Part shown: positions 13,301-19,300 of the stretch, piece after piece
Position numbering within the stretch: the first letter of the stretch is position 1
How the letters are laid out: every line of letters begins with the position of its first letter
NCBI RefSeq assembly: GCF_003918875.1
Contig: NW_025766991.1
Location: forward strand, 2,170,001 to 2,234,000
DNA from: Haliotis rubra
Taxonomy: Eukaryota
Direction: 5' to 3'
Length of the DNA stretch: 64,000 nt
Program-made: the position numbers and the translations under genes
Notes under the pieces: generated by a model
The model's database searches: none
Told to the model about the DNA's origin: nothing
Seen by the model: the letters and a program-made list of their open reading frames with translations, nothing else

Positions 13301-16300
13301 AGCACTGTCGAACTGCTTCAGCTTCTTCAGCTGATCTTCCAAGGACATCTTGGACTGAAGACCAATTGAGGCCACGGCATCCAGGTTGGTCTCGATCCAC
13401 TGGCCTACCACATTGGCCCTCTTTCCGAACTCCCTACGCAGGTGCTCATTGCGTTGCTGCCTGGCCATCTCCCTCTGGAGAGTGGTATCACGCTCGGGCA
13501 CCAGGTGTTTGACTTCTGACCATTTGTTGGCGATGTCCTACAAATAAATCTTCAACAGTCAGAACCTCTTCTGGATAGTCAAAGTTTGTCCTCATTGCGA
13601 CATACTTCTACCGAGCTGATGACATACAGTAATATTTTGTCACATCATTGACTTAACGATAAGGAAATTTGGCAATATATTATCAAATGGATCATATTCA
13701 ACTTTGAAATGTTGCCCATTCCTGCATTCCTAATAAGGTAAATTATGTGAGATCAGGACTCAAAAAGAGCCTCTGTTTATCTGACAGCAGTTCCATCCTA
13801 CATTTGAGTCTGGAAAAAATGAAATGTTGAAACTGACAACCATTTTGGTGCTGAGACGATGAGACAATGGTACAATGAGGATGATGTCACAATGTTGATA
13901 CTGACAATGATGGATGTTGATTGACAGTCAAGCACTACTGCATTCATTATGCATGGTAAGATGCATGCTATGTAACTTTTAACATATTACTCCATGTACT
14001 CATGAGTAGTTCGAGCACTTTGTCATAAACAATACAAAACAATACATCATGCAATAATATTACTAAAATATCTATGTACAGAACGATGTTGAATTATAGA
14101 CACAATAAGCACTAAACACTGTTTAAAAAATATTTTAACTTTGATCTTTGATGAGAGAAATATTTGCAGTTTTTCATCAAGTTCATTTCAGAAGATCAGA
14201 CTCCACAAATGTTTATAATTTTAACAAAATTCAAATGATTGAGAGTGAATTATCTGAGTGAGTATACAATTTGAGATTAATATTAGTAGTCATTATAGAA
14301 CTATATGACACTTAAACTACCTGTAATTCCTCTAACAGATATATTAAATTAGCCAATACTCAGAGATACACTGAAATGACTTCTTCGTTACCTTACAGCA
14401 CAAGAACCAAAAAACCTGTTGTCACTCACTCCAGAAAATGTTTACGTGCACATTTAGTGAACAAGAGAGACAAAAACAAAAGAAATTTATCATGCCAGTT
14501 ACCAGATTTGACCTTACAAGAAGATTTGACTAGACAAGAAGTGACAACTGATAAAGCTTTTGTTTCATGCTGCAAACACCGTCCCGTGTGAAGAGAATAT
14601 TAAATGTTATGTTTTAGTCTTTATACGTGGCTACACAGTACATAGAATAGCCATTCTCTACCAACAACAGACACAGTAGGCTGCCGTTCCAAAAAACAAA
14701 CTCAGATCTAAGACTGCGTAAGTCGACGTTAACCTTACAGAGTAACTATTATTACTGAAAAAACCCCTTTGTTCAATGCGGCCCAGGGCCCTGTCCTAAA
14801 TGGGATCTTAGCGCTAAGGCAATTGTGACTCCTATACTTTAAACTCTCAACAGTCCTAAGATCCTTGTACAGAACGGGACCCAGGTCCATGATTGGGTTC
14901 TAAATACTGGCATGGCTAAATAGTTTTCATTAAACGATTATATTTACAAGCATTAATGATAACTATTATTCATGCACTATCATGCCTTCACATGCTGAGA
15001 GAAAGATAAGATAGCAGAAACTTTCAATAGTTATTAAACATTGAATTTTCTTTTATTGTGATGCAGTGTTTGGCTTATCACACTTTGACAAATAAACATT
15101 TATGATGGATTAACCTTAGTAGCTCCTACACATATTGACAGTTAGTTCCCATTACCTGAAGCAGTTAGTATATAGGTTAGTGTATACATCGTTGTTATCG
15201 ACTGTCAGGAGAAATGTGACGTGTAATTAGTTGGGCGTGAAAGTTGGACAATGTGAAGTGAGTGAGTGAGTGAGTAAATGTTGCTTTAAGCCATGTGAAA
15301 ATTGAACAATGTGAAACATTGAAAGTTATTTCCGTTACGAAACCATCAGACATGGCACTGACGGCGCCAGTATTTCTCCTGTGATTCTAGAGCCTCATGT
15401 TTATTTTGCAGAACATTGAAACTATCTAAACAACAAACACTAAACTATGTACATCTGTGTGACTGATGGCATCAGGCTGCTGATAGCGAAGATGAATCCC
15501 CATCATTCAAACTCCATGTTTTCAAGGCTGCACGAAATTGGCAGGGTGTATTCAAGTAACTTTGTAAGTAACATTTTGTGGTTGAACAAAAAGAAAATTC
15601 AGTCATAATTGGGACACATAATCAGTGAATTCCGTTATTATGTTTTACCAAGACACCATGCCATAAAAAAAAACACGCTAATAAAAGTGTTTACTCCAGG
15701 GATGGCAACAGGAAAATCTATATCCAGCAGAAAACAATACTGTGTCATTGAATGGGGGGTCAGAATAGATCAATTTGAAATAAAATCAGCGGAAATTCGT
15801 GAATCAGCGGAAAGTTGTCATCCCTGTTACTTAGATAGATATCAAGTTGGGAGTTCAAAAAAGTTTTTTTTTTTTTAAATTCTCATCCCAGACCTTCATG
15901 CCCAAACATGCCTTCACCACATGCGAAAAGTATCACATACATTCATGAGGTAAAAAATTTTTTGTGATTTTTATGATCAAAACAGCTATCCAACCACCCC
16001 CTACACATAAAATCTGGTACAATGTTCGATATAGTCCATCCCCATTCCTTTGATCTCCATTCCGTCCACACAGATGCACATTAAAAAACATAACAACAAA
16101 AAGCAAATCTAAAGTGACAGTGAAGTACAGCAACACTGTATGTAGCTTTCCTCCATTGTGCAACAGGGTTAGCACCTTGCAATAAACATGGACATTACAA
16201 AACAGCTGAATACAGAGGCTGAGTAGAGAAGCGATCTCTCGCCGGCTCTCTCGTACCCAAGCCAGTGAGGGCAGCACATACTAACCTCCTACTCCCAGTC

Positions 16301-19300
16301 CAAGGCAAAAACAAATGTAAAGAGAGGGGACAAACACTTTAAAATGGGTGCATGAACCTAGATGGTATGGGTTAGACATTTGCAATCATTCATGAACAAA
16401 ACATACAAGTGGTTGATGAGGTTATGAAACTAGGATCAAGCATGACACAGGTGAAAACACACATCATTACACACCTAATCTAACCTTGATAGCAACTACC
16501 AGCTGCCTCATAGTAACAGCCAGCTGATTATACTAATAGTAAGCTGATTTGTAGTAACAGTCAGTTGTTTCATAGTAATGGCCAGCTGATTTATACTAAT
16601 AGCTGATTTTTAACTTCTGGACACATTGTGACTAATTACTTTTTAAAACCTTAAAACATGAATATGTATTATTCTCTTCTGAAATCAGACGAAATAGGAC
16701 GCCACAAAATTACAGGCATTTTACATGGATTAAATATGAGTGCATTTTTTGACACATATATCAGGTTAATATACAAGTGCAACATTTATAAAGGGACGAT
16801 CTGTTTACAGTTAACTAAGGGAAATATTACAGTGATAATAGAGGGTTTGTGATATTAGCATGGCCCTGTATAGTCACTACTATATCTGTAATCAAGGTGC
16901 CTAGCATACCTCCATTGGGCTTTCATCCTGCAAATTCAGTGATTTGTGCAATAACACAGTGAAAAAAACTTGCAAAATATTTTAGGCACTGCACACTGCT
17001 AGTCTAAAACGTAGATAGTAAACAGTGCGTGCTGAGAACTATTGTCCGCAATTAAAGCAGAAGCTAGACATGTGATTTAGAGAAAATGTTTTAAGAAAGT
17101 TGAGATCCTAACCAAGGCCTGCTGCAAAAGACACTGGTCTGACTTTCAACTCATTTGATATGGAACTTGACCATAGACTCATCTTTACAAAAATTGAAAA
17201 TCATTACATTTACCTCTGAATTAAAATTATTCGAATAAAAAATCTATCACATTATACCAGGGACTAAACCTAGCACTAGCCAAAGTTGGTATGTCTGATG
17301 AGAAAAGATTCCATGGCTTGAGGAATTTCAATTTTGATGTGTCCTGACATCACTATTCAGGCAAGTATAACGTTTCAGGTCAAACTGCATCTCTGATGAA
17401 ACTACATCAACCATTAAGATTCAAAACAAGAATTAAAAGAGAACAGTCAAGATTTGACATTGCAAAACTTTATCAATTTGAAAAGAACCCCTTATTCACC
17501 AGAAACTAAATCGCCAAGTTCCACAACCAATGCTTGTTGCAGCTATGACTATGTAAACCTAGACATCTACTGCAGCACGTTTATAGAGACGGAAGTCCAC
17601 GTACCTGAGCGTGCAGTGTGGAGTAGGGGTTGTCTGGTGGCGTCAGGTTGTACTGCTGGGCCAGATGATTCACTTCCTGGACCAGAGAGATGATGGTCTG
17701 GAACTCCTTGTCTGCCTCTCCAAGAGTGGCCTTGAACTGCTCATGGGCGTCAATCAGACCCTGAATATGTCCAAGCTTACGCGTAAGTGCATAGAACCTT
17801 CTAGCACTGAGTTTTTAAAGGAATATCATGGACCTTAAGCAGGCTGCATCATGACAAACACATAAAAACCAACATGGCCAATTAGATGTAGTCCTTAGTA
17901 AATGTTGAATATAAATAGTTTTCAAATTCAAACCTACATTTTGATATCAAGCTTATGAATTAACATTTTGTTTCATATTGGATAAATACATTCAAAGTAT
18001 TGTCCTTCAGTATCAAAACCTCTAGGAGTTAAAATTGCAGACAATTTTAAGATGGTATAGATGCTTCAGAATGGAAATCAAAACGAAAATATTATATATT
18101 TTTTGTGACGAATGGCTGTCAGGACTTGCCTGCACTTCCTCTGTTGTGTGCACGATGAACATATCCATCAGATCTTCCTTGGCTCCATCCATCCAGTTGT
18201 TGAAGGGCTGCAATGGAAGTCACTCACAATGTAGTCAGTTCTCACACACATTCTAAACCAAATCAATCAATCTATTACATCCTCGTTTCTGATCTTTCTT
18301 ATATAATCAACCATAACATAACTGCAGATCAGTATGCTGCTGATTCAGTGTTCATATTAGCTGACAGTGGGGTCATGGATCCACGAAAACACAAATGACC
18401 TTCAGGGATTCACCTTGGAACCCCTGGTCCTATCATTTTGTACCCTGATCAATCAACCTACAGGGAATGGTCCAAGAGACCCCTAGGTATTCAAATCAAC
18501 CTGAAGCTGTAATGTGTTAAAGGACACTTACTGCAGCTCTCTTGGCAAACTCCAGATGAAGCTGATCAATCTTCTCCAGAATCCTCTCAGCCTCCTACAA
18601 GACAGACACATGAAGGTCAGTTTTATGCACAAGTATGACATGTCTAAAAGAAAGCTTTGTTTCCTAACACACCATCTCTATTATTCAAGAAGACAAGGGT
18701 GAGAATGAAGTCCTTGAGATTTATTTTCACATACTGGGATATTATTTGAAGGATTTACAGGAGAAATCATGAAACATTTGAGCTGCAAAATCATGCCCAA
18801 TTAGAAAAGTTTGCAGTTATGCCAGAGCTGTGGGAACACTGTGGCAAACAGCCGACATGTCGATCTACACCGACAGTGAAGGTCATAGGATGTTCAGAAA
18901 CAAACTGACTGACTGACTGAGTTTGGTTTTACGCCGCTTTTAGCAATATTCCAGCAACATCACGGCAGGGGACACCAGAAATGGGCTTCACTCATTGTAC
19001 CCATGTGGGGATTCGAACCTGGGTCTTCGGCGTGATGAGCCAACGCTTTAACCACTAGGCTACCCCACCGCCCCAGAAACAACTTGAAACATAAACAGGA
19101 GACAACTTACATCCAGTCCTTCTCTCCTCTTCTGCGTCAATAGACCAAGACGGTCCCACTGATCACAGATATGCTGCAGGGAAAAGGAATATTTCAATCA
19201 ATTATCATAGTTTGCTAAAGCATAGGCACTGTAATAGCACACATTTATAAGATACTTATATGTTTGTATTATTAATCATGGTTTAAGAAACCATGGACAG

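What the first reader, a model, noticed from the sequence alone, without database searches (positions are those of the whole stretch)
13538..17604. Intron 17 (spectrin repeat 3) looks like a hidden microexon cassette array
Seen: this phase-0 intron is about 4 kb, while its neighbours are mostly 0.1-1 kb, and SINEs do not explain its length. It contains several frame-preserving YAG...GT candidates on the sense strand: 17113-17121 (QAL, 9 nt), 16910-16927 (DESPME, 18 nt), 16286-16288 (E, 3 nt) and 14392-14415 (VFWFLCCK, 24 nt). There is also a 46-nt (15156-15201) plus 11-nt (14321-14331) pair that together restores frame, and clustered splicing-factor motifs. Known: alpha-actinin splicing is best described at the ABD/neck and EF-hand exons. 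Inference: a combinatorial insert between NPYSTLHAQ and DIANKW could diversify the rod surface. Some candidates may be chance matches.
Basis: partly seen in the sequence, partly recalled or inferred. Interest (0 to 1): 0.72.

Follow-up and report, generated by a model that had tools for sequence, protein, structure and literature searches.

The report
Conserved 3-base microexon in alpha-actinin intron

Summary
The intron (17604 to 13538, minus strand, 4,067 nt, phase 0, GT-AG) between the alpha-actinin exons ending ...NPYSTLHAQ and starting DIANKW... is real.

Such candidates are common. The intron holds 119 frame-preserving YAG...GT candidates, which is within the range of control stretches. 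RNA-derived contigs of three related organisms join exon 17 to exon 18 and show no joint inside the intron. The array is not supported.

One candidate survives: the 3-nt GAG (Glu) at 16286-16288.
- Its core AG|GAG|GTTAGTA is invariant in the orthologous intron of five other divergent invertebrate genomes whose introns are otherwise unalignable.
- It is unique in this genome.
- In one congener run the junction contig carries three extra letters that fit GAG, though the tool flags that row as uncertain.
- An mRNA-like contig of another lineage has an 18-nt insert starting with GAG at the same junction.

Best reading: a deeply conserved, alternatively used 3-nt microexon that splits "intron 17" into introns of 1,316 and 2,748 nt. 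It adds a Glu at the start of helix C of spectrin repeat 3. Inclusion in this species' own mRNA still has to be shown from raw reads.

The parts
17605..17760 (-). Alpha-actinin exon 17 (52 codons, ends ...NPYSTLHAQ; helix B and B-C loop of spectrin repeat 3)
   Evidence: Sequence and frame; PDB alpha-actinin-2 match; joints 17759->18129 and 13536->17604 in RNA contigs
13538..17604 (-). It is removed as one piece in the direct exon 17-18 form
   Evidence: Joint that skips 4,067 nt in X1, X4 and X8; sequence
16289..17604 (-). Upstream sub-intron (1,316 nt) if the microexon is used. It ends ...tttgtttttgccttggactgggagtag
   Evidence: Unique sequence in the genome
16286..16288 (-). 3-nt microexon GAG (Glu), in frame between Q (end of exon 17) and D (start of exon 18)
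   Evidence: Invariant in six genomes in the orthologous intron on the sense strand. The X10 joint 13539->17604 fits three extra letters G+AG. GAA, also Glu, stands at the equivalent element of L066
16276..16320 (-). Conserved block: pyrimidine tract, TTGGAC, AG, GAG, donor GTTAGTATGT. The 12 invariant letters are 16279-16290
   Evidence: The only blastn hit at E below 0.001 between the window and L002 introns (E=4e-4). Alignment A2 has 12 consecutive invariant columns. The 13-mer occurs once in the window with 0 expected. The 15-mer occurs twice in the 1.38-Gb genome and the 131-nt block only at itself
13538..16285 (-). Downstream sub-intron (2,748 nt) if the microexon is used. It starts gttagtatgt
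13253..13537 (-). Alpha-actinin exon 18 (95 codons, DIANKW...; helix C of repeat 3 running into repeat 4)
   Evidence: The exon boundary is conserved in many invertebrate genomic fragments
16910..16927 (-).
   Evidence: Acceptor 7.3, donor 4.4. Expected 0.1-0.25 equally good candidates per 4 kb. No conservation. No joint
17113..17121 (-). QAL 9-nt candidate: chance match (poor donor)
   Evidence: Donor score -4.4, below all 23 real donors. No conservation and no joint
14392..14415 (-). VFWFLCCK 24-nt candidate: chance match
   Evidence: Acceptor -3.0, donor 0.5. Four differences between the window and X1/X4 contigs at 14413, 14412, 14389 and 14386
15156..15201 (-). 46-nt member of the proposed 46+11 pair: chance match
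   Evidence: Acceptor -1.8, donor 2.9. No joint
14321..14331 (-). 11-nt member of the proposed pair: chance match
   Evidence: The AG directly before it is absent and the last exon base differs (CAG to CAA) in the closest relative L001, which aligns at 71% over the last 795 nt of the intron
15679..15839 (.). High-copy interspersed repeat of about 130 nt. With 14767-14901 and 15245-15309 these are the only repeats found in the intron
   Evidence: Own-genome DNA searches. Raised contig depth and loose ends there
15897..15928 (-). Three GCATG within about 30 nt, 364-387 nt downstream of the microexon (possible Rbfox-type sites; not conserved in position elsewhere)

Best explanation
The 4-kb 'intron 17' of this alpha-actinin gene is two introns (1,316 and 2,748 nt) separated by a deeply conserved 3-nt cassette microexon, GAG, at 16286-16288.

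How it works: if the acceptor AG at 16289-16290 and the donor GTTAGTAT at 16278-16285 are used, one Glu codon enters the mRNA in frame between ...HAQ and DIANKW.... If they are ignored, exon 17 joins exon 18 directly. The direct form is the main one in the runs of organisms A and C.

The added Glu falls in the first turn of helix C of spectrin repeat 3, right after the B-C loop. It lengthens or recharges that loop end without shifting the rest of the helix.

Shown: the anatomy, the conservation, the uniqueness in the genome, and the direct junction.

Inferred: that the element is spliced into mRNA in this genus; that recognition rests on the invariant donor, which matches the U1 consensus from -2 to +8 except at +3, together with the upstream pyrimidine tract, TTGGAY and TGC motifs; and that the G-rich 7-nt insertion between tract and AG in this genome weakens inclusion.

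The other five candidates are chance AG...GT pairs.
For: 1. The only blastn hit at E below 0.001 between this intron and the orthologous 4,778-nt intron of L002 is window 16320-16276, centred on ag|GAG|gttagtatgt.
2. The pattern taken from that pair was then found once each, on the sense strand and inside the exon 17-18 intron, in L003, L004, L009 and L012. These have different gene structures and 63-72% identity in exon 18. Alignment A2 has 12 consecutive invariant columns. Chance for a 12-mer in one such intron is about 1e-4 to 6e-4.
3. All-against-all blastn of the introns finds no other block at E below 0.001 between the distant lineages; the remaining marginal hits (E 0.002-0.03) are AT- or pyrimidine-rich.
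4. It is not a repeat. The region is unique in the 1.38-Gb genome, and the 15-mer occurs twice, about as often as chance predicts.
5. L066 has acag|GAA|gtaagt, a synonymous Glu codon. The related elements and insert are 3, 9, 9 and 18 nt, all multiples of three.
6. L013, an mRNA-like contig, reads ...LSAQ + GAG CTG GAG TCA GAG AAG + DIAHKW.... That is an insert at exactly this junction, beginning with GAG.
7. In X10 (organism B) the only exon 17-18 joint is 13539->17604, 'skips 4064', with no letters shared by the two sides, depth 169. That is what CAG-GAG-GAC would give. X1, X4 and X8 give 13536->17604 with three shared letters, the direct form.
8. The orthologous intron is also the long one in L002 (4,778 nt against 0.4-1.8 kb for its neighbours).
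9. An AlphaFold model of the homologous region (pLDDT 92.5) puts the junction at residues 101|102, with the loop at 85-99 and helix C starting at 100.
Against: - No run of this organism (X1, X4) or of organism C (X8) shows the GAG form. All three show the direct junction.
- The X10 row is flagged 'between: not known'. It could be a direct junction reported with raw ends, or a longer insert that starts with G and ends with AG.
- All runs are assembled contigs, which drop minor isoforms and cannot place a 3-nt piece.
- In this genome the acceptor is poor by the gene's own matrix (-8.9), with a purine-rich tgggagt between the pyrimidine tract and the AG.
- The element is absent from L008, which has a complete 2,273-nt intron, and from clades with short introns (L024-L058). 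Some lineages have no intron here at all.
- The taxa of L002-L012 are unnamed, so the depth of conservation is judged only from sequence divergence and gene structure.
- Homology of the L013 insert to the GAG block is not shown.
- The protein databases gave no mollusc-like isoform with the extra Glu.
Confidence: 0.7

Rival explanations
1. The conserved AG|GAG|GTTAGTA block is a splice-site pair that is engaged but rarely or never ends up in mRNA. It would be a decoy or intron-subdividing element that slows or controls removal of this intron, and the intron's partial retention would be its read-out.
For: X1 and X4 contigs cover the whole intron continuously (13512-17633) at depth 15-18, against 46-78 for the spliced joint. 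Introns 16 and 18 have no cover. Only direct junctions are seen in organisms A and C. The acceptor is weak in this genome.
Against: Once the AG is used, the only GT available leaves GAG in the mRNA, because CAG|GAGGTT has no GT at the cut. The three letters are Glu (GAG or GAA) in seven genomes, and the related elements are multiples of three. L013 shows a real insert at this junction. The X10 joint fits +GAG.
Confidence: 0.17
2. One reading: several frame-preserving microexons ([18 protein letters not shown], 46+11) are used in combination to diversify the rod surface.
For: DESPME has passable sites on both sides (7.3 and 4.4). Another lineage carries an 18-nt insert at this junction. Elements of 9 nt exist in L066 and L067. 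Junction-contig depth is 25-50% lower than the flanking exon depth in X1, X4 and X10, so minor forms could have been dropped.
Against: There are 119 such candidates in the intron and control stretches give similar counts. A DESPME-grade candidate is expected 0.1-0.25 times per 4 kb. None except GAG is conserved. No joint or inserted letters were found in any run. The 24-nt candidate varies freely within the species. VFWFLCCK is a hydrophobic peptide at a solvent-exposed loop end.
Confidence: 0.05
3. The conserved block is not related to splicing: a shared mobile-element core, an enhancer, a small RNA or a chance match.
For: Some repeat cores are shared between phyla. The block is short.
Against: It is unique in this genome. 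It occurs once per locus, always in the orthologous intron and on the sense strand. There is no Rfam or tRNA hit. The invariant letters are exactly an AG, one codon and a donor consensus.
Confidence: 0.03

Closest known systems
Known 3-nt cassette microexons: mouse Ncam, Drosophila troponin T (both cited in PMC8042270), cytohesin-1 (PMC6314551), Drosophila homothorax micro-Ex8 (PMC7392893), MAP4K5 three-base exon (PMC8632122)
   Same: A single codon flanked by AG and GT inside an intron, adding one residue in frame. The flanking signals are conserved far beyond the surrounding intron. Standard aligners and annotation miss such exons.
   Different: The host gene and site are different: the alpha-actinin rod, spectrin repeat 3. 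My searches found no report for this gene. Inclusion in this species is not yet shown. Regulation is unknown.
Described alpha-actinin alternative splicing: mutually exclusive EF-hand exons and ABD exons (Actn1/Actn4, PMC11285346 citing Waites 1992 and Kremerskothen 2002)
   Same: The same gene family. This gene also has a duplicated 79-nt exon pair in CH2 (26391-26313 and 26204-26126).
   Different: Those events swap whole homologous exons in the actin-binding or calcium-binding domains. This one adds a single residue in the rod.
Recursive splice sites (ratchet points) in long introns (from general knowledge; no paper was read for this)
   Same: A 3' splice site next to a 5' splice site deep inside an intron, conserved, dividing the intron into two steps.
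   Different: Ratchet points have AG directly followed by GT (zero-length exon) and leave nothing in the mRNA. Here three letters lie between, and they must stay in the mRNA if the sites are used. The introns are only 1.8-10 kb.
Decoy exons in retained or detained introns (from general knowledge; no paper was read for this)
   Same: A conserved cryptic exon inside an intron that is partly retained in RNA.
   Different: Described decoy exons are usually longer and often disrupt the reading frame. This element keeps the frame and codes Glu.

Membership tests
Cassette microexon (3-30 nt) | AG directly before and GT directly after, on the sense strand, inside an intron of a coding gene | tested here: met
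   tag|GAG|gttagt at 16290-16279
Cassette microexon (3-30 nt) | Keeps the reading frame without a stop codon | tested here: met
   Phase-0 intron plus 3 nt GAG gives Glu. Related elements are 3, 9, 9 and 18 nt
Cassette microexon (3-30 nt) | Exon and flanking splice signals conserved across species well above the surrounding intron | tested here: met
   12 invariant columns in orthologous introns that are otherwise unalignable: five sequences in A2, with L012 as a sixth genome; introns compared
Cassette microexon (3-30 nt) | Found in mature mRNA, with and without the exon | tested here: inconclusive
   Skipped form shown in X1, X4 and X8. The X10 joint fits +GAG but is flagged 'between: not known'. 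L013 has an insert beginning with GAG in another lineage. Read laying was limited to one call
Cassette microexon (3-30 nt) | Tissue- or stage-regulated inclusion (for example neural, through Srrm234 and UGC motifs) | not testable with these tools
   TGC lies within 60 nt upstream in all six loci, but that is near chance expectation. Tissue labels of the runs are not given
Recursive splice site (ratchet point) | AG immediately followed by GT, so that a 5' splice site is regenerated and nothing stays in the mRNA | tested here: not met
   Three letters (GAG, or GAA in L066) lie between the AG and the GT in all genomes that carry the element
Alpha-actinin | Two CH domains, spectrin-repeat rod, EF-hands with a Ca-insensitive EF-hand tail | tested here: met
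   Pfam CH, Spectrin, EF-hand_6 and EFhand_Ca_insen on single exons. PDB alpha-actinin-2 matches, 1e-26. 23 coding exons collinear with a 910-aa alpha-actinin. Single copy in this genome
Decoy exon in a retained intron | Host intron retained in polyadenylated RNA, with a conserved cryptic exon inside | tested here: inconclusive
   The whole intron is covered at 15-18x in X1 and X4 while introns 16 and 18 are not. These are contigs only, with strand and library type unknown

The most novel reading that the evidence does not exclude
The Glu microexon is an ancient regulated switch in the alpha-actinin rod that predates the split of the divergent invertebrate lineages sampled here. The exon 17/18 junction would then be a conserved hot spot where lineages have grown the insert from 3 to 9-18 nt (EQE, TFE, ELESEK). 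In this gastropod it may be combined with at least one further cassette, such as DESPME, in particular tissues.
Probability: 0.2. Interest if true: 0.75.

Novelty: new member of a known kind. Interest (0 to 1): 0.55.

Why it matters
Three-base exons are the hardest exons to annotate, and only a handful are documented. One that is invariant across very divergent invertebrates, in a core cytoskeletal cross-linker, would mean a one-residue change at the start of helix C of spectrin repeat 3 has been kept by selection. That points to an unrecognised functional site on the alpha-actinin rod, for example a partner-binding or dimer-packing surface.

For this scan, it turns a mostly chance-level list into one precise claim that can be tested by searching raw reads.

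Tried and rejected
- Word search with exon 18 and the exhaustive representative search returned mostly single-exon genomic fragments and no full-length mollusc alpha-actinin. A fish-like 910-aa protein (P0094) served only to lay out the exons.
- An alignment of P0094 with the exons as separate rows (A1) was misaligned by MAFFT and was dropped.
All searches were exon by exon, by reference.
- P0046 and P0051 looked vertebrate or human-like and were not used.
- Profile search with exon-18 fragments (A4) and a search with P0171 gave spliced fragments. All have the direct junction (10 residues between NPY and KW) except P0173.
- Of the contig look-ups, P0017 and P0189 returned no DNA.
- The 15-nt tail of the L013 insert has no counterpart in the window or the other loci.
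- A second weak block (window 16655-16608 against L003) is AT-rich and absent from L003's nearest relative, so it was rejected.
- Rfam, tRNA and tandem-repeat scans of the intron gave nothing relevant, apart from a 21-nt tandem repeat at 16499-16603.
- U12-type branch site and branch-point readings of TTGGAY were considered. They were rejected by eye on spacing: in L002 the motif's A lies 3 nt before the AG.
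Full report
**1. What is there**

The window carries one alpha-actinin gene on the minus strand, with ATG at 56132 and the stop at 10168-10166. I laid out 23 coding exons plus a duplicated 79-nt pair (5a/5b), exon by exon against a 910-aa alpha-actinin (P0094), and fixed each boundary from the sequence. Single exons hit Pfam CH, Spectrin, EF-hand and EFhand_Ca_insen and PDB alpha-actinin-2. 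The gene is single-copy in the 1.38-Gb genome.

Exon 17 is 17760-17605 and ends ...[12 protein letters not shown]|gtacgt. Exon 18 is 13537-13253 and starts ttgtag|GAC ATC..., DIANKW. The intron is therefore 13538-17604, 4,067 nt, phase 0.

The rod and EF-hand introns around it are 126-787 nt. Only introns 1 and 2 (17.2 and 11.4 kb) are longer. Repeats found by searching the organism's own genome cover about 9% of the intron, and the 5' 1,765 nt are unique.

**2. Are the candidates more than chance?**

All six are at the stated coordinates. However, the intron holds 119 stop-free, frame-preserving YAG...GT candidates of 3-51 nt.
- Dinucleotide shuffles give 79 +- 11.
- Seven other 4,067-nt stretches of the window give 74-152 on the same strand.

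I scored the candidates with a matrix built from the gene's own 23 donors and acceptors, scoring the real sites leave-one-out for comparison. Only DESPME (16927-16910) has passable sites on both sides (7.3 and 4.4). Each other candidate has at least one site scoring at or below the weakest fifth of the gene's real sites, and the 3-nt candidate has the worst acceptor of all (-8.9). Controls yield a DESPME-grade candidate 0.1-0.25 times per 4 kb. Of ten splicing-factor motifs only GCATG exceeds shuffles (11 against 4.7 +- 2.0); TCTCT is weakly raised (z about 2.1) and the other eight are at chance.

**3. RNA evidence**

One run search and one laying were allowed. All runs were served as assembled contigs, and their RNA nature is a guess by the tool. 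Spliced joints prove that RNA-derived sequence is present.

Joints for introns 16, 17 and 18 are seen, and no joint lies inside intron 17.
- X1 and X4 (organism A, which also supplies the DNA runs) and X8 (organism C) give 13536->17604, 'skips 4067', with three letters shared by the two sides. This is the direct junction.
- X10 (organism B) gives only 13539->17604, 'skips 4064, between: not known', with no shared letters, 30 letters on the shorter side, depth 169.

Three extra letters that match 17604 (g) and 13539-13538 (ag) are what CAG-GAG-GAC would produce. The flag means the tool cannot exclude other letters, or raw ends of a direct join. I rate this as suggestive, about two in three, and not as proof.

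In X1, X4 and X10 the junction contig is 25-50% shallower than the flanking exon contigs. That would fit a minor isoform dropped by the assembler, but there are other possible causes.

Separately, X1 and X4 contigs cover the whole intron from 13512 to 17633 at 15-18x, against 46-78x for the joint. Introns 16 and 18 have no cover. This points to selective retention of this intron.

**4. Conservation**

Exon-18 fragments from the protein searches led to genomic contigs of other invertebrates.

In L002 the orthologous intron is also the long one: 4,778 nt against 0.4-1.8 kb for its neighbours. The only blastn hit at E below 0.001 between the two introns is window 16320-16276 (E=4e-4).
- window: ...ccttggac tgggagt ag|GAG|gttagtatgt
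- L002...ccttggacag|GAG|gttagtatgt

I then searched for the derived pattern in independent loci. It occurs once each, on the sense strand and inside the exon 17-18 intron, in L003, L004, L009 and L012. These lineages differ in gene structure: exons 16+17 are fused in L002, exons 18+19 are fused in L009, and exon 18 is split in L012. They share only 63-72% identity in exon 18.

Alignment A2 (the window, L002, L003, L004 and L009) has 12 consecutive invariant columns, AG GAG GTTAGTA; L012 carries the same 12 letters. The supporting checks are:
- A given 12-mer is expected about 1e-4 to 6e-4 times per such intron.
- All-against-all comparison of the introns finds no other block at E below 0.001 between the distant lineages; the remaining marginal hits are AT- or pyrimidine-rich.
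- The block is unique in this genome and occurs once in the window with none expected, so it is not a repeat core.
- A pyrimidine tract, a TTGGAY motif and TGC triplets precede it in all six loci.
- L066 has acag|GAA|gtaagt, a synonymous Glu, nested in a possible 9-nt exon. L067 has a 9-nt element ending GAA|gtaagt.
- The element is absent from L008 and from clades with short introns, and some lineages lack the intron altogether.

**5. Transcripts elsewhere**

Among spliced fragments and about 30 contigs, mostly from JGI samples, in which exons 17 and 18 are contiguous (spliced or intron-less), the junction is direct, with 10 residues between NPY and KW. The one exception is P0173/L013. It reads ...LSAQ, then GAG CTG GAG TCA GAG AAG (ELESEK), then DIAHKW.... 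This shows that inserts at exactly this junction exist in mRNA, and this one begins with GAG. Its 15-nt tail has no counterpart in the loci at hand.

**6. The other candidates**

- In L001, the closest relative available (71% identical over the last 795 nt of the intron), the AG directly before the 11-nt candidate is absent and its last base differs (CAG to CAA).
- The 24-nt candidate differs at 14413, 14412, 14389 and 14386 between the window and conspecific contigs.
- None of [17 protein letters not shown] or the 46-nt piece is conserved or joined.

**7. Where the residue goes**

An AlphaFold model of the homologous SR3-SR4 region (P0094:505-745, 13-sequence alignment, pLDDT 92.5) has the B-C loop at residues 85-99 and helix C from residue 100. 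The exon junction is at 101|102, which corresponds to positions 335|336 along the deposited chain sequence of 1hci_A. A Glu there extends the loop end or the helix N-terminus without shifting the heptad register of the long helix C.

**8. Verdict**

The array is not supported. The best reading is one deeply conserved 3-nt microexon (confidence 0.7).

The main rival is that the same splice-site pair acts mainly as a decoy or subdividing element tied to the observed intron retention (0.17). Three-base microexons are a known kind: Ncam and fly troponin T via PMC8042270, cytohesin-1 PMC6314551, hth PMC7392893 and MAP4K5 PMC8632122. I found no report of one in alpha-actinin. It is therefore a new member of a known kind.

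The decisive test is a search of raw reads, or an amplicon, for CAG-GAG-GAC.

Noticed in passing
window 13512-17633: RNA-derived contigs of X1 and X4 cover the whole of intron 17, across both exon borders, at 15-18x. That is about a fifth to a quarter of the junction-spanning signal (spliced joint plus unspliced). Introns 16 and 18 have no cover. This looks like selective retention, and the read-through frame stops after 7 codons (VRGLPSL*).
   Followed up: partly
window 17761-18129: Intron 16 has a GC donor (CAG|gcaagt). The 369-nt skip is confirmed by an X10 contig.
   Followed up: partly
window 10280-10290: The last coding exon changes frame at a run of five C between ...QELPP and DQAEYCI.... 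One base appears to be missing compared with every homologue. This is probably a homopolymer error of the assembly, not a broken gene. It was not checked in reads.
   Followed up: no
window 26126-26204 and 26313-26391: Two 79-nt homologous exons in CH2 (5a/5b), each with AG and GT: a mutually exclusive pair, as another first-stage note says.
   Followed up: partly
L013:1-60 (JGI 3300039246): An mRNA-like contig of another invertebrate carries an 18-nt insert (ELESEK) at the same exon 17/18 junction. The contig starts only 13 nt upstream of the junction, as expected at an assembly branch.
   Followed up: partly
L066:5856-5864; L067:1729-1737: Microexon-like elements that end in GAA|gtaagt (3 or 9 nt, and 9 nt) lie in the orthologous intron of two further genomes. 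They suggest the insert size varies between lineages.
   Followed up: partly
window 17064-17065: X1 and X4 contigs carry 31 extra letters here compared with the window (an indel polymorphism). Overall the conspecific intron contigs differ from the window by about 3%.
   Followed up: no
window 4633-6213: A long tandem array with an open frame on both strands lies downstream of the gene. It inflates any motif count in that region.
   Followed up: no
window 16499-16603: A 21/42-nt tandem repeat inside the intron. It generates many of the overlapping AG...GT candidates.
   Followed up: no
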